Virus record (IMG/VR): IMGVR_UViG_3300033145_003233
Coordinates: 1 to 64,000 of that record
Reading direction: 5' to 3' (one strand)
DNA length: 64,000 nt
A program made the translations under genes and the position numbers. Numbering within the stretch: the stretch's first letter is position 1; every line of letters starts with the position of its first letter. Below are positions 6,673-55,407 of the stretch, in pieces. The notes under the pieces are model-generated. The model was not told the origin of the DNA. It worked only from the letters and a program-made list of their open reading frames with translations, and searched no databases.

Positions 6673-6700
6673 ATTATACCATAAATTTTTCACTTTTCAA
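6673..6700 (-). promoter_or_regulatory. sigma70-like promoter TTGAAA-AGTGA-N-TG-n-TATAAT (16-bp spacer)
   Basis: Same architecture at 6791-6818, 7755-7782 and 45496-45523. Confidence 0.7.
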
Positions 6701-42593: not shown

Positions 42594-42665
42594 TTAAAAT
42601 CCCCACTAAAAATTTTATTATTAATATCTGAATATTATAAGAAGCGTTCTATCACTTTTCAAACA

Positions 42666-43376
42666 TTATAATAAAATTCCTTCTAATTCTTCCCTCGTAT
42701 ATTTTTTTTCTCCACACATCTCTATAGCCTCTTCTAAGGTATGTTTCGGAAAAACTTTATTATTTGAGCAATTGATAATTGTCTTATTTTTACTGTTATC
42801 TCTTATAAATTTCAGACCCTTAACACAGGCAGGAAGGGTATGTGGCCTGTGCATAGCATTATTTCCATAAAAATCTGTCTCTTTCTTCTTCCCATATTTA
42901 CAGTCCATCCCCACCAAAACGATAGGATTGCATCTTAAGGTATAAGCAAATTGGTATGTAATAGTTCCACTACTCCCCCTGCCATAAAGAACGGTAGTAT
43001 TAGGGGGTAAACGAGGTTCTCTCCCTCCTAGTTTAAATGAATAAAACCCCCCTTGAGTTTCAGATCCTTCTCTACAATATTTTATCGCCCTGGTCTTAAG
43101 AACCTTCTTTTTTTCCTGTAACCACAATGCTAAATCTTGCCATATCAAAATAGTCGGATCGTATTTAAAAAAAATTCTATTCATCCCTATTGTGAAATAA
43201 TCATTCAACAAGGATAAATTAACATTATTAAGAGAAGGAGCATTCCCGAGTAAAAAAACGGGAATGTCCTTCATTTTACCTGTCCAATTTAAAGGATTTA
43301 AAGGCTTAACTCTTGCTCTTCGTTGCTTAGTCCTTATATTCCTTCTCATCCAACTTGGCCTATAAACTTTTCCCAT
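42666..43376 (-). CDS. Maf/DUF115 (MptE-like fold) glycosyltransferase-like protein
   Basis: LLGNAPSLN...TIGMNRI...SGTITYQFAY..RCNPIVLVGMDC. Confidence 0.65.
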   Translation of the reverse strand: MGKVYRPSWMRRNIRTKQRRARVKPLNPLNWTGKMKDIPVFLLGNAPSLNNVNLSLLNDYFTIGMNRIFFKYDPTILIWQDLALWLQEKKKVLKTRAIKYCREGSETQGGFYSFKLGGREPRLPPNTTVLYGRGSSGTITYQFAYTLRCNPIVLVGMDCKYGKKKETDFYGNNAMHRPHTLPACVKGLKFIRDNSKNKTIINCSNNKVFPKHTLEEAIEMCGEKKYTREELEGILL

Positions 43377-43918
43377 GAAGATGGAATCTTCAACTTAGGG
43401 TCGAATAACAACTGCTTATCGCTTGGTTTTCCAGGTTTCTTAATCAACTTTAGACCAGCTTCCTGAGGAGTTTTATTTCCTTTAGCTCTATTAAGATCTC
43501 TTGAACAAACAACCATATTCTCCCAAGAATTCTTTCCTCCTCTTGAACGAGGAACAACATGGTCAATGTCCGCATTTTTATGATTAACCTGTTTACCAGT
43601 ATATTGACATTGATATCCATCCCTGATATAAAGATTTCTCTTAGTTAATCTTAGAGATTTTCTATGCACCTTATCATAATTTAGTAGAACGACCACCTCT
43701 GGAATCTTTATATCACCCTGAGTAGTCGTTATGCCTTCTTCTTCCTCTGCTACGGGCAAAGAGGCCCATTTCTCCCAATTATGAATAGAATAGTCGCTGG
43801 GCAGCACTATAGATGCCTTGTCTGCAAAGATTAATTTGAGACATCTTTTTACAGAGGCTACTCTAATTGGAATCCACATTTTGTTAAGAACCAACACTGG
43901 TTTTGCCAAAGAAGACAT
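43346..43918 (-). CDS. HNH endonuclease (HNH_5 type)
   Basis: VLVLN...RDGYQCQY...IDHVVPRSRGG..SWENMV....N..KGNKTP. Confidence 0.92.
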   Translation of the reverse strand: MSSLAKPVLVLNKMWIPIRVASVKRCLKLIFADKASIVLPSDYSIHNWEKWASLPVAEEEEGITTTQGDIKIPEVVVLLNYDKVHRKSLRLTKRNLYIRDGYQCQYTGKQVNHKNADIDHVVPRSRGGKNSWENMVVCSRDLNRAKGNKTPQEAGLKLIKKPGKPSDKQLLFDPKLKIPSSWEKFIGQVG

Positions 43919-43920
43919 AA

Positions 43921-44421
43921 TTACTCCTTTTTCAATAAAGACACTTCATTTATAAACTCTTCATTCTCATCAATAATTTTTAACTCAATTTTTTCTTTAA
44001 ACTTATAACAAGCTTCCATTGTAGCTCTAGCTACACTTTTTTTATCAAGACCTCCTGGTTCAATGCCAAGGCCACATATAGTTGCTGTCTCTATATTATC
44101 GGCAACTATAGCACTCAAAGTATTATCTAATGCTCTCTCTACTATATAAATAGAACTGAAATCACTTTGTAATCTTTTTATTACAGCATGATAAATTCTT
44201 TTAAGTCCTCTTCGATTTAACCTACCTGATCCTGTACAAAAACATTCTCCTAATTCTATTTCATTATCTAAAGCAAAAGCCCTTGCTTCTTTAGAAATAC
44301 CAGTTAGCCCATCTTTTACAATCTTAGCTGCTCTGCCTCTCCCCATCACCCCCATTGCATTAGCTGGTATAATAAGAGCTTCGGACTTAGGATAGCAGAT
44401 ATTTCCCAATATTATTTTCAT
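43921..44421 (-). CDS. Macro domain protein (ADP-ribose binding/hydrolase), divergent
   Basis: ALIIPAN..GVMGRG.A; GEC.CTGSG.L; IYHAV; CGLGIEPGG. Confidence 0.8.
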   Translation of the reverse strand: MKIILGNICYPKSEALIIPANAMGVMGRGRAAKIVKDGLTGISKEARAFALDNEIELGECFCTGSGRLNRRGLKRIYHAVIKRLQSDFSSIYIVERALDNTLSAIVADNIETATICGLGIEPGGLDKKSVARATMEACYKFKEKIELKIIDENEEFINEVSLLKKE

Positions 44422-44613
44422 TTTACACTATTTCTCACTTTTTGTCAACTTTTTTCTACTTTTTTTGAAATATTTTTATTTTTTACTTCTTTTTTTTGTC
44501 TAGCAACGTACAATGAATCAATAGTATTGATAGTATCGATAGGTACATACTATAACTATCTACTAGTACCTGGATATTATTATAAATAATAATATACACG
44601 TCCATCTCTTTTT

Positions 44614-45459
44614 TTAAAATAAAGGATCATTGTTATTACACCTCTCTATGTACCCTGAAATGTCTTTTCCAAAGAAAACAGGGTTTCTCTCTATTTTATC
44701 CCTTAATCTGGGAAGAATAGCTGTATGGAGTTGGCTTATCCTAGATTCTGACATGTTTAGTTTTCTAGCAATATCTTCCATTGTTAGATTTTCATAATAA
44801 TAGTAATATATAATCTTTTGCTCCATTCTTGTAAAGCTCTTACTCATTAACTTGTTGAGAAATTCCTTTCTTAGTAAAGTACTATCAGGAGTCTTTGTTT
44901 TTTTATCTTCTATATCTCCCAAAGAATCCTGCTTGAAATTCTCCTGCTTTTCCTTACCACAAATATCTGATCCCTCTAAACTGATAAAGCTTATTGGTTT
45001 ATACTTTTTGATATTTTTAAGATATTCTGTTTGATTTATACCTAATTTTTCCACAACTTCATAATCTGTAACTTTCCCTCCTTTAGTATTTTCCATCTCG
45101 GACTTCATTTTTTCAAGAAGATTATTATTAATCCTTACACTTCTTGGTATAATATCTTCTTTTCTGATACCATCTATCATAGAACCTCCTATCCTACGAT
45201 TAGCATAAGTAGGGAAATCTACTCCAGCATCTAGACAAAATCTATCTATAGCCGAATATAGACCATCTATTCCTAAACTAGTAAGTTCTTCTGGTAGGAC
45301 TTTCCACCTTAAATTCTTTGCAAATTTATAAGATATTTTTTGAACTAATGGGTAATATATCTCTATTAATTCGTTTTTAAGGTTCCCTTTTTTCTTTTCA
45401 TTTTTTTCTTTTTTAAATCTGATCCACAAATCCAAGTTGTGTATTTTCTGCTTTTCCAT
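44614..45459 (-). CDS. RNA polymerase sigma factor, FliA/WhiG (sigma28)-like
   Basis: Region 2 EL..LG..GL..AIDRF....F.TYA..RI.G.MID.IRK; region 4 LTMEDIA..LNMSESRISQLH. Confidence 0.9.
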   Translation of the reverse strand: MEKQKIHNLDLWIRFKKEKNEKKKGNLKNELIEIYYPLVQKISYKFAKNLRWKVLPEELTSLGIDGLYSAIDRFCLDAGVDFPTYANRRIGGSMIDGIRKEDIIPRSVRINNNLLEKMKSEMENTKGGKVTDYEVVEKLGINQTEYLKNIKKYKPISFISLEGSDICGKEKQENFKQDSLGDIEDKKTKTPDSTLLRKEFLNKLMSKSFTRMEQKIIYYYYYENLTMEDIARKLNMSESRISQLHTAILPRLRDKIERNPVFFGKDISGYIERCNNNDPLF

Positions 45460-45495
45460 ACTCTCCCCTTCCTCTTAGATATGAAAGCATATCTA

Positions 45496-45523
45496 TTTTT
45501 AACAAATTTCTCTCACTTTTCAA
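45496..45523 (-). promoter_or_regulatory. AGTGA-class sigma70-like promoter for the sigma gene
   Basis: TTGAAA-AGTGA...TGT-TAAAAA with 16-bp spacer. Confidence 0.5.
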
Positions 45524-45531
45524 CAATTTTC

Positions 45532-45560
45532 TTGACAAAACCCCTGAAATAGAGTATAAT
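45532..45560 (+). promoter_or_regulatory. Consensus sigma70 early promoter TTGACA-N17-TATAAT
   Basis: Perfect -35 (45532-45537) and -10 (45555-45560) upstream of pncB. Confidence 0.88.
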
Positions 45561-45641
45561 TCTAGAATTAATTTTCCAGACAACTGTTTTTTTGTAGCAA
45601 AAGTATAATTAAACCTTGTTTTTTCTTTGATTGGAGTTTAA

Positions 45642-46994
45642 ATGAAGAGAATTATCAATAGCATATTAGATAACGATTTATACAAATTTACCATGCAACA
45701 AGCGGCCCTTGAGTTGTTTCCTAATGCAGAAGTTACATACGCATTTAAAAATAGGGGAGATCAAAGATTCACTCCTGAATTTATAACAGAACTCAAAAGC
45801 CAAATATCTAGAATGATTGATATTAAGTTAACCCCTGATGAATACTTTTGGTTAAAAAACAATATATCCTTCTATAAACCTCAATATCTGGAATATTTAG
45901 CAAATTACAGATTTAATCCAGGAGAAGTAGACGTTATTTTAAATGATAATAATGATTTAGTTCTAAATATCAGTGGGAAATGGCATACTACAATCCTATG
46001 GGAAGTTCCTCTGATCGCTCTGATTAGTGAATTATATTTCAAGATGATAGATACAGAGTGGAAAGGGGAAACAATTATGCAGAGAAAATGTTTCCCAGAT
46101 GACTGGTATGGAGATTTGGGTCTTACATGGGAAGATGCCCCAAAGAGATGGGACAAAACAGATCAAAGGGAAAATGCCTTTATAAAAATAAGAGAGATGC
46201 AAAAAAATCAATGTGGTTTCGCTGATTTCGGAACTCGCAGAAGAAGAAGCTTTGAGAACCAAGACAAAATAATTAAAGCTTTCATGGATTTTCAGAAAGG
46301 AATACAAGATAGAATTGTTCTTCCTGATGAGATAGATGAATTCAAACCTTCTCCAGATAATGGGTTCCCATTCGTTGGAACTAGCAATCTTTATTTTGCT
46401 ATGAAGTATGGATTAAAACCCATAGGAACTATGGCCCACGAATGGATTATGGCAATGGCTATTTTGGAAGGATTATACAACTCTAATTACTATGCCCTTC
46501 AAAACTGGGTAAGAGTTTATAACTCTGATTTAGGAATCGCCCTTACAGATACTTATGGTCTACAAACTTTTCTCCGCAATTTTAATATTAGATTAGCAAA
46601 ATTATATGACGGAGTAAGGCATGACAGTGGATGTCCCTTTAATTTCGCAGACGCGATTATTTCTTATTACAATAGTCTCAATATAGATCCAACTTCTAAG
46701 ACTATTGTATTTAGCGATGGTTTAAATATAGAAAATGCCATCCAAATTAAAAAACATTGTACTGACAAATGGGATAAACCAAGAATTAAATGTTCCTTCG
46801 GCATTGGAACACATTTGACAAACGATCTTGATGGGAGCAAGGCTCTTAATATCGTGATTAAACTATTTTCTTGTGAAGGAATCCCTGTCGTAAAATTAAG
46901 CGATGTAGAAGGTAAGGTAATGGGAGATCCTGATGCTGTAAGAGTAGCCAAGTGGATGTTCCAAAAAAGACCCTTAGATTGGAAACATAGATAA
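45642..46994 (+). CDS. pncB: Nicotinate phosphoribosyltransferase
   Basis: LDNDLYKFTMQQ, DFGTRRR, GTSN, GTMAHEW, LTDTYG, GVRHDSG, VFSDGL, FGIGT, KLSD. Confidence 0.95.
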   Translation: MKRIINSILDNDLYKFTMQQAALELFPNAEVTYAFKNRGDQRFTPEFITELKSQISRMIDIKLTPDEYFWLKNNISFYKPQYLEYLANYRFNPGEVDVILNDNNDLVLNISGKWHTTILWEVPLIALISELYFKMIDTEWKGETIMQRKCFPDDWYGDLGLTWEDAPKRWDKTDQRENAFIKIREMQKNQCGFADFGTRRRRSFENQDKIIKAFMDFQKGIQDRIVLPDEIDEFKPSPDNGFPFVGTSNLYFAMKYGLKPIGTMAHEWIMAMAILEGLYNSNYYALQNWVRVYNSDLGIALTDTYGLQTFLRNFNIRLAKLYDGVRHDSGCPFNFADAIISYYNSLNIDPTSKTIVFSDGLNIENAIQIKKHCTDKWDKPRIKCSFGIGTHLTNDLDGSKALNIVIKLFSCEGIPVVKLSDVEGKVMGDPDAVRVAKWMFQKRPLDWKHR

Positions 46995-47041
46995 TGATTA
47001 AAGAAACTTTAGAACAGATATTTAAAAGGAGAAATAAAACA

Positions 47042-47350
47042 ATGAGCCTAATGAAAAAAATCATAATAGCAGCAGTGACCCTAATAATTATATTGTCTGT
47101 TATTTCACTTGCCCCTAAATCAGAAAAACCTGCTCCATATTTTCAAAATGGAGAGATAGTAGTCCACACTCTGAGCGGAAGAAAGGGGCAAATTATTGAT
47201 AATGCTTATCAATATAATAGGAAGTCAGAGTGTTGGAGAGTTAGTGCTAAAATGGTAGACCCTGATCAAAAAGGTTCTGTCCTCCTTGGAAAAATAACTG
47301 GAATGATAACTGAAAATTTTAATGAATTTGAATTGAGAAAAGAAGAATAG
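47042..47350 (+). CDS. Membrane-anchored or exported small protein
   Basis: AAGGAG SD; KKIIIAAVTLIIILSVISLA hydrophobic N-terminus. Confidence 0.7.
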   Translation: MSLMKKIIIAAVTLIIILSVISLAPKSEKPAPYFQNGEIVVHTLSGRKGQIIDNAYQYNRKSECWRVSAKMVDPDQKGSVLLGKITGMITENFNEFELRKEE

Positions 47351-47351
47351 A

Positions 47352-47564
47352 ATGAAAAATCCAGAAGAACATTATACAAAACATGGCTTTAAAGACCATG
47401 CAGTAAATCTTGCTAATTTAGAAAAAAGCACTGGCTTTTTTACAAATAATGCAGACGACCTAGAGCTAGAAGATCACCCAGACCTTCTTGATGCCCTATG
47501 GATGGTAGAAGAGTGGGCCAGAAAAGAAATGGAAAAAATAGAACTCAAATATTTAGATACTTAA
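47352..47564 (+). CDS. Hypothetical protein
   Basis: Tightly packed operon ORF. Confidence 0.7.
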   Translation: MKNPEEHYTKHGFKDHAVNLANLEKSTGFFTNNADDLELEDHPDLLDALWMVEEWARKEMEKIELKYLDT

Positions 47565-47577
47565 AGAAAAAACAACC

Positions 47578-47799
47578 ATGGCAAAAGAAGATATAGAAAA
47601 GCATCTTAACCAACCAAAGATAGAAGCCGTTTGTCCTAAATGTGGATGGACAGCTAATGTTCCTACAAGATTGGTTGGGAATGAATGGCCAATTGATGAT
47701 GTTAAGTGTAGTAAATGTTTCAAAGAACGACTTACATTTGTGAATCTTGTGCCTAAAAATGTAATAGATCAAATATCCTGTTATCATAAAAGAAATTAG
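47578..47799 (+). CDS. Zn-finger microprotein
   Basis: CPKCG...CSKC. Confidence 0.7.
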   Translation: MAKEDIEKHLNQPKIEAVCPKCGWTANVPTRLVGNEWPIDDVKCSKCFKERLTFVNLVPKNVIDQISCYHKRN

Positions 47800-47808
47800 G
47801 AGACAACT

Positions 47809-48042
47809 ATGCCAAAAACAACAAGAGCAAGAACAATATATAATTCTAAATGTCTATGTTGCAGTGATATGCAACATGAGATGGTTAAAATTGGTCAGAT
47901 GACTTTTTGTCCAAAGTGTTTTAAAAAAGAGTTTGTTGACACTGGGGCATATAATATTAAAACTCATGAAGTCTTATATAACAGCCCTGCTTATCAGGAT
48001 TGGTTTGAATCATATAAAAAGTATATAGTCAGGATTAGTTAG
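47809..48042 (+). CDS. Zn-finger microprotein
   Basis: CLCC...CPKC; AGGAG SD. Confidence 0.7.
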   Translation: MPKTTRARTIYNSKCLCCSDMQHEMVKIGQMTFCPKCFKKEFVDTGAYNIKTHEVLYNSPAYQDWFESYKKYIVRIS

Positions 48043-48048
48043 GAAATT

Positions 48049-48327
48049 ATGAAATGCCTGAAATGTGGATATTGCTGTGATTTTTCAGATGTAGTTATTG
48101 TAGATGATCCCTCGAAAGGAATATCTACAGATAATTTAACTATAAAAAAAACTGGAGAACGATGCCCACACTTAAGAGGCGATAAGCCAGGAAAATTTTC
48201 TTGTGCTATTCATGATTATCCATGGTATGAAGAAACTCCTTGTTTCTCTCATGGTCAAATAGAAAGAAATATTAATGATAAATGTAGAATGGGAGTTCAT
48301 ATATTAAAGGAAAAAAAACATGCTTAA
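48049..48327 (+). CDS. CxxCxxCC (YkgJ/FliB-like) Cys-cluster protein
   Basis: CLKCGYCC...CPHL...CAIH....C. Confidence 0.7.
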   Translation: MKCLKCGYCCDFSDVVIVDDPSKGISTDNLTIKKTGERCPHLRGDKPGKFSCAIHDYPWYEETPCFSHGQIERNINDKCRMGVHILKEKKHA

Positions 48328-48946
48328 AAATATAATATTAAAACCTTGTCCAGGTGGATGCGAATGTAAGCCTATTTACAAAGACTTCCAAAGCATAGGT
48401 GAAGGAAGATTTATTATGTGTCCAGGTTGTGAATGGACTGGCCCTACATGTGGCACAGAAGCCGAAGCAGCCTCTATGTGGAACAAAAGATGTAGTGTTT
48501 TTCAATCTAAAGAAGCACTGATATATGCTTTAGCAAGAATAGAAAATTGCTGGACACATCACCAAGATGGATCTGATTTGAGAAAAACTCATAGTTCTCA
48601 TCTTTTTAGTTTGATTTTTAACGACTTAAAATGGGCAATAACAGATGATCCTGATTTTCAATGGAGCCGCATGTTCTTAGAAGGAGAAGAAGAAGAAATA
48701 AAATACCTCTTCGAAAAAGATTATAGCTTCGCACAAACTCTAAAAAGAATAAAAAAAGTAGAAGTAAAAGCTCAAAGTAATATAAATGATGATTTACTCA
48801 ATGCTTGTCAAGATATGGCATCTATCCTCAATGGTTTACATCTTGGAACAATGATTGACAATGGCGACAAGGTTGATAGAATACGAGAAGTTGAAGACAA
48901 TGCAAGGGATATAATTGCAAGGGCAAAGGCAGATAAAAAAACATGA
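48320..48946 (+). CDS. Lar (restriction alleviation)-like Zn finger fused to unknown domains
   Basis: LKPCP..C...IMCPGC..TGP....AEAASMWNKR. Confidence 0.6.
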   Translation: MLKNIILKPCPGGCECKPIYKDFQSIGEGRFIMCPGCEWTGPTCGTEAEAASMWNKRCSVFQSKEALIYALARIENCWTHHQDGSDLRKTHSSHLFSLIFNDLKWAITDDPDFQWSRMFLEGEEEEIKYLFEKDYSFAQTLKRIKKVEVKAQSNINDDLLNACQDMASILNGLHLGTMIDNGDKVDRIREVEDNARDIIARAKADKKT

Positions 48947-49092
48947 ATATAATGTGTGCTGCCTGTAAGCACAAATTTAAAATTACTACAGAAGAATTTC
49001 CAACATGGAATGAAACTTGTATTAAATGTAAATCAAGAATGATATTGAGAATAATTGATAAAGAGTATTTTGAACATGAAAAAAATGAGTGA
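48943..49092 (+). CDS. Zn-ribbon microprotein, 49 aa
   Basis: Hand-translated MNIMCAACK...CIKCK; ATGA overlap with the upstream gene. Confidence 0.55.
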   Translation: MNIMCAACKHKFKITTEEFPTWNETCIKCKSRMILRIIDKEYFEHEKNE

Positions 49093-49531
49093 ATTAAAAA
49101 AAGCTTTGAGAGCAGAGTTGAGACATTGGGAAAGGCTCAGAGATGGAGAGTTTAAATTCCATATCATAGGGGACAGAACCGAACCTCTCCAAAGACCATT
49201 ATGTAAATATCAACATAAGGTAAGAGGGGAAATGCCCCGGCATGTAAAGGACGCTATCAAAGAGCTTTGGTCTAAGTTGGAAGAACATGAAATAGAACAT
49301 AATATTAGATATGTAAAATGTCTTAACTGCCCTCTATGTAATCCTGATGGAAGAGGAGTGGGAGGAGCTACTAGTGAATGTTGTTGTCATGAATATAATA
49401 CACTTGAATGCTGTTATTTAAAATTAGATGAGCATAATGAATATAGCAAAGATTACTGGGTTCATTTGTGTAATGGATTAATTATTGAAATCAAAGAAGA
49501 ATTAAGACAATTAGATAGAGATAAAAAATGA
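49085..49531 (+). CDS. Cys-rich hypothetical protein
   Basis: Start reassigned to MSELKK. Confidence 0.7.
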   Translation: MSELKKALRAELRHWERLRDGEFKFHIIGDRTEPLQRPLCKYQHKVRGEMPRHVKDAIKELWSKLEEHEIEHNIRYVKCLNCPLCNPDGRGVGGATSECCCHEYNTLECCYLKLDEHNEYSKDYWVHLCNGLIIEIKEELRQLDRDKK

Positions 49532-49806
49532 AAGTTAAACAAACCATTCCAGTTCTTAGTAGTATCTCAGTAGTCATAGAGGAAATTAAATATAAAAACA
49601 CTCTTTGCACGATAGAAGTTACTTGTAATCTCTATGATTATAATGATGATGAACCAACATGGAGTTGTACTACTGCTTCCTGTAAAGAACCTTATTTTAT
49701 TATGGGTAGTAGTTTTTGGGCAGAAGAGTTTGGAAAAAGACAAGCAAATAGAATTGTAAAACTATGCAATCAATCAGTAAAAACTTATTTGAAAGAAAAT
49801 ATATAA
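49528..49806 (+). CDS. Hypothetical protein
   Basis: Coupled overlaps on both sides. Confidence 0.65.
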   Translation: MKVKQTIPVLSSISVVIEEIKYKNTLCTIEVTCNLYDYNDDEPTWSCTTASCKEPYFIMGSSFWAEEFGKRQANRIVKLCNQSVKTYLKENI

Positions 49807-50351
49807 TGGAACACAAAATAGATGATATGGAGATGTTAAGTGGTCTTGAATCCCATGGTGGAGGCGGAATTTTTAAAGGTTTTGTTTTTGTAAAGTCTAA
49901 AAAATATGATGCCTTATCAAAAGAAACAAAAACTCATATATCTTTCGAAGCCTCTGATTACTTGCAGATAATTCAAAATAAGATCGAGATGGAATGGGCT
50001 AAGGTCCATGAAGCTAAAGAACGCAATGACCATGTAACTGAGTTAACTGAGATATTTAAGTCGGCAGGGTTTAATGTTATCCACGTTGAGGCAATAGATA
50101 GCCAATATTGTAGCAAAGCTTGTTGCTATAAATGGCCTTGGGTTATTGTCACCACCCAAAAAGGTCGTATTAAACTTGGGTGGAGAAAAAGAGTAATAAA
50201 TCTGGACTGGTCAGAATCAGATATCAAAGCTATTGGTATGGAATTATTTAAGGGTGAAAACGTTACAACTGGAGAACATTATATACATTGCTGGGGTAAA
50301 GACAAGGCAATTGAATATTTAAAAAAGCTTAACTCTGTTATCTCTATTTGA
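49806..50351 (+). CDS. Hypothetical protein
   Basis: TAATG coupling; WPWVIVTTQKGRIKLGWRKRVINLDW. Confidence 0.7.
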   Translation: MEHKIDDMEMLSGLESHGGGGIFKGFVFVKSKKYDALSKETKTHISFEASDYLQIIQNKIEMEWAKVHEAKERNDHVTELTEIFKSAGFNVIHVEAIDSQYCSKACCYKWPWVIVTTQKGRIKLGWRKRVINLDWSESDIKAIGMELFKGENVTTGEHYIHCWGKDKAIEYLKKLNSVISI

Positions 50352-50363
50352 AGGGATGCTAGG

Positions 50364-51524
50364 ATGAAGAAGATACTAATAACAGGCGGACCAGTTCCTG
50401 CTTATTTAGATGATGTTAAAATCATCACTAATAAGTTCAAAGGTGGACTTATGGCTAATTTAGCAGAGATGTTTTATGATCAGCCTGATTTATTCCCGGA
50501 TGTAGATATTACTTATCTCACCTATAAAGGATCAAAAATCCCATATTTAGGTGGAGATAAAAAAATAAACCGTGTTGTCTACCACGATGGGATATTTGAT
50601 TATAAAGATAAAGTTTTAGCATTATCTCCTGAAATGGATGCAGTTATTCTAGGGGCCGCTGTCGCTAATCTTATCCCGCGAAATAGAATCGAAGGGAAAT
50701 TTCCCAGTCATAATTATAAACCAGGGGATGTTATTGAACTCTATTTTACTATCGCTCCAAGAATAATAGATGAAGTTAAAAAAGTTGCTCCTAAAACTCA
50801 TCTGTTTGGATTTAAACTACTTTCAGGAGCAGACTACGAAGAACTAATTAGTGCGGCATATGGAGTTCTGTTAGAATCAAGAGCCACAGCCGTATTCGCT
50901 AACGATGCTATGGATCTAATGCAGAAATATGCTGTAACTAAAGAAAGAGCAGTCCATCCTATCACCAATGGACAAGTTCCTCAATGGATATGGGAAGCAA
51001 TACACGAAGAATACTATCAAACAGAATTTAAAGATCTTCCTAATATTTATAATGCCTATAGCAACATAACATACGTTCAAAAAATGATAGAAATTATAAA
51101 GTACTATAGAAAGGATTTTGTAGAAGTAGAAAATCAAATCCTTCTAGGAACCGTTGCTGTAAGAGAAAATGATGGGTTCTTAACAACGAGAAGGAAAAAA
51201 GGTTTGAATCTATTTTCTATTGACCCTATCCGTGATGTTGTATATGTGGAGAAAGTAGATCATAAGAAAAGAATAGTTTATACGTGGGACAATAAAAAGG
51301 CAACTCTAAATGCTCCATTATTAGCTCGCATTTTTGAGGTAAGGGAAGATGTTGATTATATTGTTCATCACCATCACCAAAGAAAAGATTTGCCGACAAA
51401 AAAATATGCGACCCCAGGAACAAAAGAAGATAGTAATAGAAGGGTAAAACAACACCCATCATTTAATATTAAAAAACATGGTTGTATTTTGTCTTTTAAT
51501 AGAGAAGGAAATTTAATAAAATGA
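50364..51524 (+). CDS. CoaB (phosphopantothenoylcysteine synthetase)-like domain fused to a class II aldolase/adducin-like domain
   Basis: ILITGGP....LDDVKIITNK.KG; ILGAAVAN; LFGFKL; C-terminal LLARIF...DYIVHHHH...KHGCI. Confidence 0.7.
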   Translation: MKKILITGGPVPAYLDDVKIITNKFKGGLMANLAEMFYDQPDLFPDVDITYLTYKGSKIPYLGGDKKINRVVYHDGIFDYKDKVLALSPEMDAVILGAAVANLIPRNRIEGKFPSHNYKPGDVIELYFTIAPRIIDEVKKVAPKTHLFGFKLLSGADYEELISAAYGVLLESRATAVFANDAMDLMQKYAVTKERAVHPITNGQVPQWIWEAIHEEYYQTEFKDLPNIYNAYSNITYVQKMIEIIKYYRKDFVEVENQILLGTVAVRENDGFLTTRRKKGLNLFSIDPIRDVVYVEKVDHKKRIVYTWDNKKATLNAPLLARIFEVREDVDYIVHHHHQRKDLPTKKYATPGTKEDSNRRVKQHPSFNIKKHGCILSFNREGNLIK

Positions 51525-52219
51525 AACATCCCTATCCGAAAATAGAAAGATATAAAATTCTTTATGCTCGATTTCTTCAGGGAGATAGAAGCAAACAATT
51601 AATGGATCTTGCCGGAGATTTCAAAGATAAAGTTTTTCTAGATATTTGTTGCGGAGAGGGGTTGTTAACACTAGAAGCAATAAAAAGACAAGCTAAATTA
51701 GCTCTTGCTGTTGATTCTAATCCTCAAATGTGGGGGAAAAGATTAGATAAGATAGATAAAGTTTTTACATTTTCTCAAAAGATAGAAGCTGCCCTAGTCT
51801 CTATAAAAGAAGGGGCAAATCGATGGAGGCAATATCCAAGAATAGATATAGCGATATGCCAACAAGGAATTAATTACTGGCTTGATGAAGAAGTGGCAGT
51901 TAGGATGGCCAATGTCATGAATGACAAAGGGGTTTTTATTTTTAATACTTTTAATGAGAAACCTTCAAACTCCCTTAAAATAGAAAAATATAATCTTAAT
52001 AATAAAAACTATATTGAAATAACATGGAGATCTCCAAATATATCAACGTGTGATATTCAGCATGTACAAATATGTGAGGGTTATCCTTCTCATACAACTC
52101 AATTTATGTGGCTGAGCGATGAATATATTAGATGTTGTCTTCAAAAATATTTTGATATAGAATTAATTAAAGACGGAAAAACAAGTATTTATAAATGCAC
52201 GAGAAAGGAAAAAATATAA
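51521..52219 (+). CDS. Class I SAM-dependent methyltransferase
   Basis: FLDICCGEG, AVDS, DIAIC, GVFIFNT. Confidence 0.85.
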   Translation: MKHPYPKIERYKILYARFLQGDRSKQLMDLAGDFKDKVFLDICCGEGLLTLEAIKRQAKLALAVDSNPQMWGKRLDKIDKVFTFSQKIEAALVSIKEGANRWRQYPRIDIAICQQGINYWLDEEVAVRMANVMNDKGVFIFNTFNEKPSNSLKIEKYNLNNKNYIEITWRSPNISTCDIQHVQICEGYPSHTTQFMWLSDEYIRCCLQKYFDIELIKDGKTSIYKCTRKEKI

Positions 52220-52479
52220 TGGCAAAATTAAGCCACAAAGAAATAGTAGAAAAGATTCAACAATGGCAAAACTGCCCATTTGTTCATGAATTAACATGTA
52301 GAGATAGTAATTGTGATGGTATTTTAATCCCTAAGATTTCTGATGCAACTCATCTTTCTGTATACTTAAAATGTCCTAAATGCTCTTATACCCAAAGTCA
52401 TGTCCCAGAAATGGTATTTCATACAAATTTTGAAGCAATAGAAAAACTTTTAGATACTCTTAAAGGAGAAGCCGAATGA
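52219..52479 (+). CDS. Zn-finger microprotein
   Basis: HELTCRDSNC...CPKC. Confidence 0.7.
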   Translation: MAKLSHKEIVEKIQQWQNCPFVHELTCRDSNCDGILIPKISDATHLSVYLKCPKCSYTQSHVPEMVFHTNFEAIEKLLDTLKGEAE

Positions 52480-53252
52480 ACTGTCAAGCAGAAATCGATC
52501 ACATAGCAAAATGGATAAAAGATTATCAAAAAAATAGCGGATGTAAGGGGTATATCTGTGGAATTAGTGGGGGCATAGACTCAGCCGTTTGTCTGGCCCT
52601 CTTAAAAAGAAAAATTCCCAATAAGAATATTATAGCGGTAGCACTACCTTGTAATAGTAATGAAAGTAGTTTAATAGATGCTCAAAAATTAGTAGATAAT
52701 TTGAACATCAAACTAGAAATTATTGATTTAAGAAATAGTTTTAATTCTATTATAGATAATTTAGAGACGATAAATCATAAAAATGAAGAAATTAGCAATT
52801 TAGTCAGAGGGAATATAGCGGCCCGTTTAAGGATGGTGCAACTATATTCAATAGCAAATCTACATAATTACCTTGTATTAGGAACGTCAAACAAAAGTGA
52901 GATATTGGTTGGTTACGGGACCAAATTTGGGGATTTGGGAATTGACATTGATCCTCTTGGAGATTATTACAAAACAGAGATTTATGAGATAGCAAAATTA
53001 ATGCCAGAAATTCCACAAAGTATTATAGACAAAGCTCCAAGTGCCGATCTTTTCGAAGGACAAAAAGATCAAGATGATCTTTATTTCGACTACCCAACGC
53101 TTGATAAAATTTTACAAAGATGGAAGACTGATTGTGAAAAATATATCAATTATAATGATGGGATAACAAAAGAAGATTTTGAAAAAGTTTCATTGATGAT
53201 TAAAAAAGCCGGACATAAGAACAACATGCCCCCTATGTGCCCAAGATCGTAA
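52476..53252 (+). CDS. nadE: NH3-dependent NAD+ synthetase
   Basis: GISGGIDSAV, GNIAARLRM..LY, GTSNKSE..VGYGTKFGD, YKTEIY, KAPSADL. Confidence 0.95.
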   Translation: MNCQAEIDHIAKWIKDYQKNSGCKGYICGISGGIDSAVCLALLKRKIPNKNIIAVALPCNSNESSLIDAQKLVDNLNIKLEIIDLRNSFNSIIDNLETINHKNEEISNLVRGNIAARLRMVQLYSIANLHNYLVLGTSNKSEILVGYGTKFGDLGIDIDPLGDYYKTEIYEIAKLMPEIPQSIIDKAPSADLFEGQKDQDDLYFDYPTLDKILQRWKTDCEKYINYNDGITKEDFEKVSLMIKKAGHKNNMPPMCPRS

Positions 53253-53333
53253 CCTTAAGATACTCATTTGTCTATTTTAATCTTGCAACTTTAGCAAAAT
53301 AATTAATTAAAAAATATCAAAGAAAGGACAAAA

Positions 53334-53759
53334 ATGAAAAAAACAATAATTTTAATATATTTAATAATGATTTTTTGTAATGGATGTTCAAAAAGAAATA
53401 TGCGTGATAATTATGATGGTAAAATTACTGTCGATGTAAATAAAAAATATGATATTGTCTATAGCAGATTATTAGAGCATACCTATAATACGAAAAGTCT
53501 AAATAATTTATATGACGATAGTAAAATCGAGCATGTATTATTTAATGATACTAAAAAAGGCTATATTAGGCATTCTTATAATAACTTACTTGGGATAGAG
53601 TATTGTCTAACTTTAATAGATATACTCGGGATATCAGACAAAAAAACTAATATTACTTTATTCTATACCTATTTTTATCTTTTTGATAAACATTTAGATA
53701 AAAAAAGATTTTTACAAGATGTTGGGACATTGTTCCAAAATTATACCGTAATAGAATAA
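53334..53759 (+). CDS. Putative lipoprotein
   Basis: MKK-hydrophobic-CNGC signal peptide II-like N-terminus. Confidence 0.55.
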   Translation: MKKTIILIYLIMIFCNGCSKRNMRDNYDGKITVDVNKKYDIVYSRLLEHTYNTKSLNNLYDDSKIEHVLFNDTKKGYIRHSYNNLLGIEYCLTLIDILGISDKKTNITLFYTYFYLFDKHLDKKRFLQDVGTLFQNYTVIE

Positions 53760-54700: not shown

Positions 54701-54912
54701 TTTCTCTCCAATAAAAAAAGAGTAAAGTCTAATCCTAAACTCCGATAAAGGAAAAGACAATACTCTTTATATTATATAATCTATATTTTTACTAAAATAC
54801 TTTAATTCGGAGTTTAAGTATTCTAATCATTATATATTCTATATTTTATCTTATATCCCTTTTTTATTATTATTAAAATGTCGATATAATAATATACTTA
54901 AAATAAACAGAT

Positions 54913-55407
54913 ATGGGGTATAAAATGAAAAAATATGAAAAACAAAATAAAGCGACAATAGCATTAGCTAAAAAGTTAAATATTGATAATATTGAAGATA
55001 AATTATTTTATACAAGTTATGGGAGAGTTACAGATAGAGAGGAAAAATATGATATAAAAAGAATAAGTGAAAAAAATGCAAAAACTTATATTGTTTATTT
55101 TTTCTATGATTTATGTTATGATGGTGTTAGTGAAATTCTAAGAATATTTTGTTGTTATAATAATGAGCACAAGGTTGCTATTCTATTAAAAGGAGCAAGT
55201 GATTTTATTGTTTCAGTGGAAAGGGTGGAAGAATTTCTTGAAGAATATAAGAATGCTATTATAAAAAAGAAGAAAGAATTATTTTATAAATATTATCCTA
55301 TGGAGAATAGACTTCCCATAGACAACGAAGAAGAATTTATTTTGGTAGAAAATAATAGGGATGAAGATGACGATTACACTTTTGAAGTCAAACTTGATAT
55401 GATATAA
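54913..55407 (+). CDS. Hypothetical protein
   Basis: Isolated plus-strand ORF. Confidence 0.6.
   Translation: MGYKMKKYEKQNKATIALAKKLNIDNIEDKLFYTSYGRVTDREEKYDIKRISEKNAKTYIVYFFYDLCYDGVSEILRIFCCYNNEHKVAILLKGASDFIVSVERVEEFLEEYKNAIIKKKKELFYKYYPMENRLPIDNEEEFILVENNRDEDDDYTFEVKLDMI

What the first reader, a model, noticed from the sequence alone, without database searches (positions are those of the whole stretch)
45532..53252. Early-expressed Preiss-Handler NAD+ route (PncB + NadE): candidate NAD-reconstitution anti-defence pathway
Seen: intact pncB is the first gene behind a perfect sigma70 promoter, and nadE lies near the end of the same co-directional run. Known: Thoeris, DSR and SIR2-type defences deplete NAD+; the described phage counters NARP1 (Adps/Namat) and NARP2 (Nampt/Nmnat) use the amidated route. 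PncB makes NaMN from nicotinate and PRPP, and NadE amidates NaAD. Inference: a distinct deamidated route that rebuilds NAD+ using host or unlinked PncA and NadD/NadM, which are not in this window.
Basis: partly seen in the sequence, partly recalled or inferred. Interest (0 to 1): 0.78.

Follow-up and report, generated by a model that had tools for sequence, protein, structure and literature searches.

The report
Phage-encoded nicotinamide-to-NAD+ salvage pathway
A 548-kb phage carries all four enzymes that turn nicotinamide back into NAD+, behind host-type promoters; such gene sets are already described in giant phages, and their proposed role against NAD-depleting defences is still untested.

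Summary
An intact pncB (45642-46994) sits 82 nt behind a 12/12 sigma70-type promoter. A single-domain, NH3-type nadE (52476-53252) is gene 15 of a tightly packed 16-gene run on the + strand.

The window is the first 64 kb of a 547,943-bp virus record. The same genome also encodes nadD (93.85 kb) and a nicotinamidase-like PncA (73.6 kb). The phage therefore has the whole route from nicotinamide through nicotinate, NaMN and NaAD to NAD+. It also has an NAD-dependent DNA ligase.

All three NAD transcription units carry host-type promoters like those in front of the phage's sigma-factor genes. Early expression is therefore a reasonable inference, but no expression data were found.

The arrangement of a sigma gene facing pncB…nadE recurs in related metagenomic phages. 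pncB-nadD-nadE clusters are common in IMG/VR contigs.

The kind is published: "NAD-jumbo phages" with Preiss-Handler clusters (Li et al. 2024), which also proposed counter-defence. No experiment shows it. NARP1, NARP2 and NARP3 are different enzyme sets.

Sequence alone cannot separate counter-defence from simply supplying NAD+ to the phage ligase. Verdict: a real pathway, a new member of a known kind, moderate interest.

The parts
45532..45560 (+). Perfect sigma70-type promoter (TTGACA, 17 nt, TATAAT), 82 nt upstream of pncB
   Evidence: Genome-wide enrichment and intergenic placement. A near-identical cassette lies at genome 436250-436318(-).
45568..45583 (+). Phage-specific 'class II' promoter box (TTAATTTTCCAGACAA). 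A second TATAAT follows at 45604-45609, 3 nt further from the box than in the consensus.
   Evidence: There are 33 strict copies in the genome, nearly all intergenic and aimed at genes. One lies before ligA. The box is conserved upstream of pncB in four related contigs.
45642..46994 (+). pncB, nicotinate phosphoribosyltransferase (E. coli-like type), with two lineage-specific loop insertions
46994..50351 (+). Ten small or medium ORFs of unknown function. One (48320-48946) has a weak Lar-like restriction-alleviation N-terminus.
   Evidence: PHROG 599, E 2.4e-6; Pfam PF14354 at 19.9 bits, below its cut-off
50364..51524 (+). Fusion protein with a CoaB/PPCS-like N-domain and a class II aldolase-like C-domain; function unknown
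   Evidence: An HxH plus H pattern is conserved in the C-domain.
51521..52219 (+). SAM-dependent methyltransferase. It follows the CoaB-like gene in all 14 full loci found in other viral contigs.
52195..52479 (+). Small ORF (94 aa) overlapping the nadE start; unknown function
   Evidence: A homologue lies at the same place in L109.
52476..53252 (+). nadE, NH3-dependent NAD+ synthetase, single domain
53334..53759 (+). Last ORF of the co-directional run (141 aa), after an 81-nt gap; unknown function
   Evidence: No terminator-like fold in the gap.
44614..45459 (-). FliA/WhiG/SigF-like phage sigma factor, divergent from pncB. Its own host-type 'class I' promoter lies at about 45523-45495(-).
   Evidence: The sigma-pncB divergence is conserved in L109, L111, L118 and L124.
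43921..44421 (-). DarG-like macrodomain (ADP-ribose hydrolase family), with a class I promoter at 44448-44420(-)

Best explanation
The run from 45.5 to 53.3 kb is the core of a complete phage-encoded deamidating (Preiss-Handler) salvage pathway.

The four steps are:
1. A nicotinamidase-like PncA (genome 73.6 kb) converts nicotinamide to nicotinate.
2. PncB (this window) uses PRPP and ATP to make NaMN.
3. NadD (genome 93.85 kb) adenylates NaMN to NaAD.
4. NadE (this window) amidates NaAD with ammonia to give NAD+.

PRPP, ATP and ammonia come from the host.

Each of the three transcription units starts with a sigma70/sigmaA-type promoter. The same kind of promoter drives the phage's own sigma-factor genes. 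Host RNA polymerase therefore probably reads them from the start of infection. pncB also has a second, phage-specific promoter box that it shares with the NAD-dependent ligase gene.

The pathway keeps the NAD+ pool up in the infected cell. That serves the phage ligase, and it would also buffer the cell against NADase-type defences by recycling the nicotinamide they release.

Shown here: gene identities, conserved catalytic motifs, the PncA fold, the promoter motifs and their conservation, and synteny.

Inferred: enzyme activities, timing of expression, and the benefit to the phage.
For: Gene identities:
- pncB and nadE score above curated cut-offs.
- nadD: TIGR00482 at 184 bits and NF000840 at 180 bits, both over their cut-offs. 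It has the GGTFNPIHVGH and ISSSDIR motifs.
- PncA-like: D12, K165 and C215 (triad) and D62, H64, H71 and H131 (metal site) are invariant in 26 sequences. The motifs align to M. tuberculosis PncA. The AF2 model has pLDDT 91, and its 22 best PDB matches are all nicotinamidases.

Promoters:
- nadD and the PncA-like gene each have a class I promoter. ligA has the class II box. pncB has a perfect sigma70 promoter plus the class II box.
- The tandem arrangement upstream of pncB is conserved in four relatives.

Operon and distribution:
- pncB to nadE is packed like an operon.
- The synteny recurs in L109, L118 and L124.
- Of the 80 best IMG/VR loci with a PncB relative, 55 have NadE and 55 have NadD within 10 kb.

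NAD+ consumer: the phage encodes NAD-dependent LigA at 70837-72918. LigA is present in 17 of 25 near-complete PncB-encoding virus records.
Against: - No enzyme assay, no transcript data and no known host.
- The PncA-like protein scores just under the Pfam cut-off (25.4 against 27 bits) and carries large insertions relative to solved nicotinamidases.
- PncB has two lineage-specific insertions.
- The class II box lies just downstream of the sigma70 -10 element, so it could be an operator that shuts the promoter off rather than a second promoter.
- The promoter classes are defined by motif only.
- The phage has no PRPP synthetase, so flux depends on host PRPP.
Confidence: 0.72

Rival explanations
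1. Dedicated counter-defence, a fourth NAD+ reconstitution pathway. The main selected function is to rebuild NAD+ from the nicotinamide released by TIR, SIR2 or DSR-type NADases early in infection.
For: - The pathway starts at nicotinamide, the NADase product. The phage encodes its own nicotinamidase.
- It has no NMN deamidase (PncC), which would be needed to recycle the NMN that the ligase produces.
- The promoters are host-type.
- Neighbouring genes include a DarG-like macrodomain and a weak Lar-like protein.
- One complete PncB-encoding relative has no NAD-dependent ligase (G010).
- NARP2, which has a similar logic, was shown to counter defences.
Against: - No experiment exists for any phage PncB/NadD/NadE set. 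Searches for NARP4 and related terms found none.
- The route has four steps, needs three ATP-consuming reactions and depends on host PRPP. It is slower and costlier than NARP1, NARP2 or NARP3.
- Most PncB-encoding phages lack the PncA-like gene (strong match in 8 of 50 records).
Confidence: 0.35
2. Purely an auxiliary metabolic module. The pathway tops up NAD+ for the phage's NAD-dependent DNA ligase and for redox metabolism during a long infection by a very large genome, with no role in immunity.
For: - LigA is encoded in the genome, and its promoter carries the same class II box as pncB.
- 17 of 25 near-complete PncB-encoding virus records have an NAD-dependent ligase. In the phage genome collection only 242 of 50,697 records do.
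- Li et al. report the same link in 90 of 174 NAD-jumbo phages.
Against:
- Ligase releases NMN, not nicotinamide, and the phage has no PncC.
- Eight of the 25 near-complete records lack LigA.
Confidence: 0.35
3. The operon makes something other than plain NAD+. The conserved CoaB/aldolase-like and methyltransferase pair would act with PncB and NadE on a pyridine or ribose-phosphate intermediate, for example to give a modified nucleotide.
For: - The pair sits inside the pncB…nadE run here and in L109, L118 and L124.
- It sits next to PncA-like, PncB and NadE in a different gene order in L122, L123 and L125.
Against: - Only 6 of 14 virus records with the pair have any NAPRTase-family gene. Four complete or nearly complete records have none.
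- 79 of the 80 PncB loci examined lack the pair within 10 kb.
Confidence: 0.07
4. The genes are inactive passengers, or the record is not a phage.
For: Three Pfam models for terminase and tail sheath found nothing in the genome. These models also missed most of the other virus records tested, so the search has low power.
Against: - All catalytic motifs are intact.
- Synteny and promoters are conserved across relatives at 55-62% protein identity.
- The tool reports a virus record with 100% CheckV completeness.
- The genome has 29 tRNAs, at least four sigma-like genes, homing endonucleases and 93% coding density.
Confidence: 0.03

Closest known systems
'NAD-jumbo phages' with Preiss-Handler clusters (Li et al. 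2024, Microbiome, PMC11662467; for example Kuafu_71 pncB-nadD-nadE)
   Same: A genome over 200 kb that encodes every step of a salvage route, often together with an NAD-dependent ligase. Counter-defence was proposed there from sequence alone.
   Different: Here the genes lie in three separate transcription units (45.6, 73.6 and 93.9 kb), not in one cluster. A nicotinamidase-like entry enzyme is included. Promoter and ribosome-binding signals look sigmaA-like with strong Shine-Dalgarno sites, whereas the Kuafu clade was assigned to Bacteroidota hosts.
NARP2 (Nampt + Nmnat; Osterman et al. 2024, bioRxiv 10.1101/2024.02.11.579819)
   Same: It starts from nicotinamide and PRPP and ends in NAD+. 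It is phage-encoded.
   Different: NARP2 has two amidated steps through NMN. Here there are four deamidated steps. NARP2 was tested experimentally and this pathway was not. That paper does not mention PncB, NadE or nicotinate.
NARP1 (Adps + Namat)
   Same: A phage pathway that rebuilds NAD+ from NADase products.
   Different: NARP1 uses ADP-ribose directly and needs no PRPP. This genome has no PRPP-synthetase-like gene, and its only NAPRTase-family gene scores as true PncB.
NARP3 (PnuC + NadR; Yan et al. 2026, PMC13464706)
   Same: A phage-encoded route that restores NAD+ under SIR2-HerA attack.
   Different: NARP3 imports nicotinamide riboside. No PnuC is found here, and the only cytidylyltransferase-like gene is NadD.
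Bacterial PncA-PncB-NadD-NadE salvage
   Same: The same four reactions and the same enzyme families.
   Different: It is encoded by a virus. The PncA is a roughly 270-aa family, mostly unnamed metagenomic sequences (some on contigs up to 461 kb), with insertions. PncB carries extra loops.

Membership tests
PncB (nicotinate phosphoribosyltransferase, TIGR01514 / NF003704) | Whole-protein score above the curated cut-offs, with the N-terminal and catalytic domains | tested here: met
   458.5 bits against 379; 431 bits against 269.55; PF17767 plus PF04095
PncB (nicotinate phosphoribosyltransferase, TIGR01514 / NF003704) | Conserved phospho-histidine and PRPP-binding motifs | tested here: met
   GTMAHEW, FGTRRR, RHDSG and FGIGT align to solved NAPRTases and are invariant among relatives. 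Assigning the His as the phosphorylated residue rests on my knowledge of the Salmonella enzyme.
PncB (nicotinate phosphoribosyltransferase, TIGR01514 / NF003704) | Catalytic activity on nicotinate rather than nicotinamide | not testable with these tools
   Needs an enzyme assay
NadE, NH3-dependent NAD+ synthetase | NAD_synthase domain above cut-off, SGGxDS PP-loop, no glutaminase domain | tested here: met
   PF02540 at 219 bits; TIGR00552 at 220 bits against 63.65; SGGIDS present; 258 aa in a single domain. The best solved matches are NH3-dependent enzymes. The equivalog NF010587 is just under its cut-off (249.7 against 255).
NadD (NaMN adenylyltransferase) | Score above cut-off; HxGH and SxxxxR motifs | tested here: met
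   TIGR00482 at 183.7 bits against 112.45; NF000840 at 180.2 bits against 150; GGTFNPIHVGH and ISSSDIR present. The gene lies outside the window, at genome 93850-94512.
PncA (nicotinamidase, isochorismatase superfamily) | Pfam or NCBIfam score above cut-off | tested here: not met
   PF00857 at 25.4 bits against 27; NF008623 at 29.6 bits against 174
PncA (nicotinamidase, isochorismatase superfamily) | Asp-Lys-Cys triad, Asp/His/His metal site, and nicotinamidase fold | tested here: met
   D12, K165, C215 and D62, H64, H71, H131 are invariant. The motifs align to 3PL1. The model has pLDDT 91.3, and its 22 best PDB matches are nicotinamidases (TM by target 0.72-0.79).
NARP1 (Adps + Namat) | PRPP-synthetase-like Adps plus a NAMPT-like Namat | tested here: not met
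   No PF13793 match. The single PF04095 gene scores as PncB.
NARP2 (Nampt + Nmnat) | A nicotinamide phosphoribosyltransferase | tested here: not met
   There is only one NAPRTase-family gene in the genome, and it is above the cut-off for nicotinate-specific models.
NARP3 (PnuC + NadR) | A PnuC transporter and a NadR-type NMNAT/kinase | tested here: not met
   No PF04973 match. The only PF01467 match is NadD. The NadR kinase domain was not searched separately.
NAD-jumbo phage (Li et al. 2024) | A phage genome over 200 kb that encodes a complete salvage or Preiss-Handler route | tested here: met
   A 547,943-bp virus record with pncB, nadD and nadE, plus a PncA-like gene
Anti-defence system against NADase immunity | Restores NAD+ and phage growth in cells armed with an NAD-depleting system | not testable with these tools
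   Needs infection assays. No published test of a phage Preiss-Handler set was found.

The most novel reading that the evidence does not exclude
The conserved early module, with the sigma gene facing pncB…CoaB/aldolase-like-methyltransferase…nadE, together with the phage nicotinamidase and nadD, is a true fourth NAD+ reconstitution pathway. It recycles nicotinamide by the deamidated route. The uncharacterised CoaB-like/methyltransferase pair adds a step not found in cellular salvage, for example handling a ribose-phosphate or pyridine intermediate.
Probability: 0.1. Interest if true: 0.75.

Novelty: new member of a known kind. Interest (0 to 1): 0.38.

Why it matters
NAD+ depletion is one of the most common outcomes of bacterial anti-phage systems. 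Three phage pathways that rebuild NAD+ have been proven. A deamidated four-enzyme route would be a fourth, and pncB-nadD-nadE sets are frequent in viral contigs (155 IMG/VR contigs hold a PncB relative).

This genome is a clean test case. It has the full set, including a phage-type nicotinamidase, conserved host-type promoters, and a defined gene list that can be cloned and tested against Thoeris, DSR or SIR2-HerA.

It also shows why the anti-defence label should not be given from sequence alone. The same phages usually carry an NAD-dependent ligase, which needs the product.

Tried and rejected
- Megablast of the 8-kb region against the phage collection gave no match.
- Two look-ups for public sequencing runs, one with the 8-kb region and one with pncB alone, listed none. 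No read mapping was possible.
- Searches of the whole genome found no PRPP synthetase, PnuC, SIR2 or PncC/CinA.
- I tried to show that the sigma28-like 'class III' promoters head structural (late) genes. PHROG matches of ten downstream genes were homing endonucleases, a Ro60-like protein, a methyltransferase and unknowns, so the late label is not established.
- Terminase_6N, TerL_ATPase and tail-sheath Pfam models found no hallmark gene in this genome. They also missed most of the other virus records tested, so viral status rests on the tool's record class and on genome features.
- No terminator-like fold lies in the 81-nt gap after nadE (z-score 0.3).
- A single-sequence search for the CoaB-like gene in viral contigs found nothing. 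An alignment-based search found 15 loci.
- I considered an obligate link between the CoaB-like/methyltransferase pair and NAD genes and rejected it. Only 6 of 14 records with the pair have a NAPRTase-family gene.
- The closest named cellular PncB relatives are Methanolobus and a Bacteroidales MAG at 47-50% identity. They give no clue to the host.

Full report
**What is at the coordinates**

The + strand from 45642 to 53759 holds 16 ORFs. The first 15 have gaps of 13 nt or less, or overlap.

The first ORF is a 450-aa nicotinate phosphoribosyltransferase. It scores 458.5 bits on NF003704 (cut-off 379) and 431 bits on TIGR01514. Its conserved motifs align to solved NAPRTases. Compared with its closest relatives it has two extra loops, but every invariant position is kept.

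The fifteenth ORF is a 258-aa, single-domain NAD+ synthetase with the SGGIDS PP-loop. Its best solved matches are NH3-dependent enzymes.

A 12/12 sigma70-type promoter lies at 45532-45560, 82 nt before the pncB start. Chance expectation is 0.08 such sites per window.

**The genome**

The window is the first 64 kb of a 547,943-bp IMG/VR virus record, rated 100% complete by CheckV.
- GC content is 33.6%. The standard genetic code gives about 93% coding density.
- There are 29 tRNA genes and at least four sigma-factor-like genes.
- Upstream regions are enriched in AAAGGAG-type ribosome-binding sites.
- Together with the promoter types below, these features suggest a low-GC host with canonical sigmaA promoters. 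The host was not identified.

**The rest of the pathway**

A genome-wide search found one cytidylyltransferase-like gene, at 93850-94512. It is NadD: TIGR00482 gives 183.7 bits against a cut-off of 112.45, and both signature motifs are present.

A weak isochorismatase match at 73624-74457 turned out to belong to a large family of proteins of about 270 aa, with 3776 hits. The sequences are mostly unnamed and metagenomic. Several sources label members nicotinamidase/pyrazinamidase, and some sit on contigs up to 461 kb.

In an alignment of 26 members, the Asp-Lys-Cys triad and the Asp/His/His/His metal site are invariant, and the motifs align to M. tuberculosis PncA. The AlphaFold model has pLDDT 91.3 and pTM 0.90. 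Its 22 best PDB matches are all nicotinamidases.

The phage therefore encodes all four steps from nicotinamide to NAD+. It lacks PRPP synthetase, PnuC, SIR2 and the NMN deamidase PncC.

It also encodes:
- an NAD-dependent DNA ligase at 70837-72918, beside a MutT-like Nudix;
- a second, NudE-like Nudix;
- two macrodomains.

**Regulation**

Perfect sigma70 promoters are enriched in the genome: 10 against 1.2 expected. Eight of the ten are intergenic and aimed at a gene.

K-mer enrichment in 295 upstream regions revealed three motif classes.
- Class I is a TTGAAA -35 element, an AGTGAAAG spacer element and a TGnTATAAT -10 element, at about 30 sites. It precedes the sigma gene next to pncB, the macrodomain gene and another sigma gene at 257 kb.
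- Class II is the box TTAATTTTCCAGACAA followed by a T-run and a TAGAAT-like -10 element. There are 33 strict copies, dense before small ORFs at 155-168 kb.
- Class III is a sigma28-like CCGATATA element, a plausible target of the phage's FliA-like sigma factor.

The NAD genes carry these promoters as follows:
- nadD and the PncA-like gene each have their own class I promoter.
- ligA has a class II box.
- pncB has the perfect sigma70 promoter followed 8 nt later by a class II box.

A near-identical tandem cassette lies at 436 kb.

The phage sigma genes themselves must be read by unmodified host polymerase. Class I and the perfect sites are therefore the best candidates for early promoters. This supports 'early' as an inference only.

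The class II box could be a second (middle-type) promoter or an operator. At pncB its -10 element sits 3 nt further from the box than in the consensus.

**Conservation**

The closest PncB relatives (56-62% identity) are on large metagenomic contigs.
- In a 219-kb scaffold (L109), and in L118 and L124, the whole arrangement is kept. HNH, macrodomain and sigma genes lie on one strand. Facing them are pncB, small ORFs, the CoaB-like gene, the methyltransferase and nadE.
- In L111/L112 only the part up to pncB is kept.
- The tandem host-type promoter plus CCAGACA box is present upstream of pncB in all four relatives.

More widely, 155 IMG/VR stretches encode a PncB relative. Of the best 80 loci, 55 have NadE and 55 have NadD within 10 kb, mostly as a tight pncB-nadD-nadE operon.

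The PncA-like family matches strongly in 8 of 50 PncB-encoding records, those with the PncB closest to this one.

**What it is for**

Two readings fit, and they do not exclude each other.

For a metabolic role:
- 17 of 25 near-complete PncB-encoding virus records carry an NAD-dependent ligase. Only 242 of 50,697 records do in the phage genome collection.
- ligA shares the class II box with pncB.

For counter-defence:
- The route begins with nicotinamide, which NADases release. Ligase releases NMN, and the phage has no PncC to recycle it.
- The promoters are host-type.
- The neighbours include a DarG-like macrodomain and a weak Lar-like protein.
- A complete relative (G010) has the pathway but no LigA.

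No tool here can decide between the two readings.

**Literature**

- NARP1 and NARP2 (Osterman et al. 2024) do not involve PncB, NadE or nicotinate.
- NARP3 is PnuC plus NadR.
- Li et al. 2024 described 174 'NAD-jumbo phages', including pncB-nadD-nadE clusters. They noted the NAD-dependent ligases and proposed counter-defence against NAD+ depletion, while stating that experiments are needed.
- A 2026 paper on Xanthomonas phage X1 makes the same suggestion.
- Searches for an experimental test or a 'NARP4' found none.

The kind is therefore known from sequence, and this genome is a new, well-resolved member.

**Other genes in the run**

The 386-aa protein at 50364-51524 has a CoaB/PPCS-fold N-domain and a class II aldolase-like C-domain with conserved HxH and H residues. 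In the ESM Atlas its family is dominated by viruses.

A SAM methyltransferase follows it in all 14 full loci found, and 7 of those have PncA-like, PncB or NadE within 10 kb.

Only 6 of the 14 records have any NAPRTase-family gene, and four complete or nearly complete records have none. The link to NAD genes is therefore frequent but not obligate, and it may reflect shared ancestry.

**Limits**

- The host is unknown.
- There are no expression data.
- The gene calls outside the window are my own crude ones.
- Promoter classes are motif-based.
- Viral hallmark genes were not found with the three Pfam models tried.

Noticed in passing
Genome-wide. In the window: 45568-45583(+). Elsewhere, for example G000 70773-70790, 155-168 kb and 436 kb: A phage-specific promoter-like box, TTAATTTTCCAGACAA, followed by a T-run and a TAGAAT-like -10 element. 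There are 33 strict copies, 28 of them on the - strand, mostly before small ORFs. It is also conserved in related phages.
   Followed up: partly
G000 187149-187264: Four TTTCCAGAC boxes in alternating orientation within about 120 nt, forming two near-identical inverted pairs in one intergenic region. This could be an operator array or divergent promoters.
   Followed up: no
Window 6673-6700, 42634-42662, 44420-44448 and 45495-45523 (all -), and about 25 further sites in G000: Host-type promoters that share a conserved AAGTGAAAG element in the spacer between TTGAAA and TGnTATAAT. They precede at least two phage sigma-factor genes (at 44.6 kb and 257 kb), nadD and the PncA-like gene.
   Followed up: partly
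Window 54880-54888(+), before ORF 54913-55407; about 25 intergenic sites in G000: A sigma28-like element, (G/T)(C)CGATATA, preceded by a T-rich stretch. It is a candidate target of the FliA-like phage sigma factor encoded at 44614-45459. The downstream genes tested were not recognisably structural.
   Followed up: partly
Window 50364-52219; also L109, L113-L126 and L021: A two-gene module, a CoaB/PPCS-like domain fused to a class II aldolase-like domain plus a SAM methyltransferase, is conserved in large viral contigs. It lies next to NAD salvage genes in about half of them. No function is known and no paper was found.
   Followed up: partly
Window 43346-44421(-): A DarG-like macrodomain next to an HNH endonuclease. 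The HNH-macro-sigma order is conserved in four related contigs. It is a possible counter to DNA ADP-ribosylating (DarT-type) toxins.
   Followed up: partly
G000 228069-229823(-): A Ro60/TROVE homologue with a vWA domain (PF25045, 204 bits), behind a perfect sigma70-type promoter and a class III element.
   Followed up: no
G000 171686-183550: A cluster of 27 of the genome's 29 tRNA genes on the - strand, interspersed with class II boxes.
   Followed up: no
G000 76447-79930: An FtsH-like protein (M41 peptidase with a ClpB D2-small domain) followed by a 570-aa protein with a Ser/Thr kinase domain. A similar kinase sits next to pncB-nadE in the 195-kb relative L021.
   Followed up: no
Window 45642-46994, residues about 146-173 and 220-241: PncB carries two insertions that are absent from its closest relatives (393-411 aa). 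Their effect on activity or regulation is unknown.
   Followed up: partly
G000 255179-256489(-) (L005:1992-3302): A 436-aa protein made of repeated HTH domains. It has a weak match to the Wolbachia phage WO Wmk family (58.9 bits, far below the cut-off) and lies next to a NudE-like Nudix.
   Followed up: no
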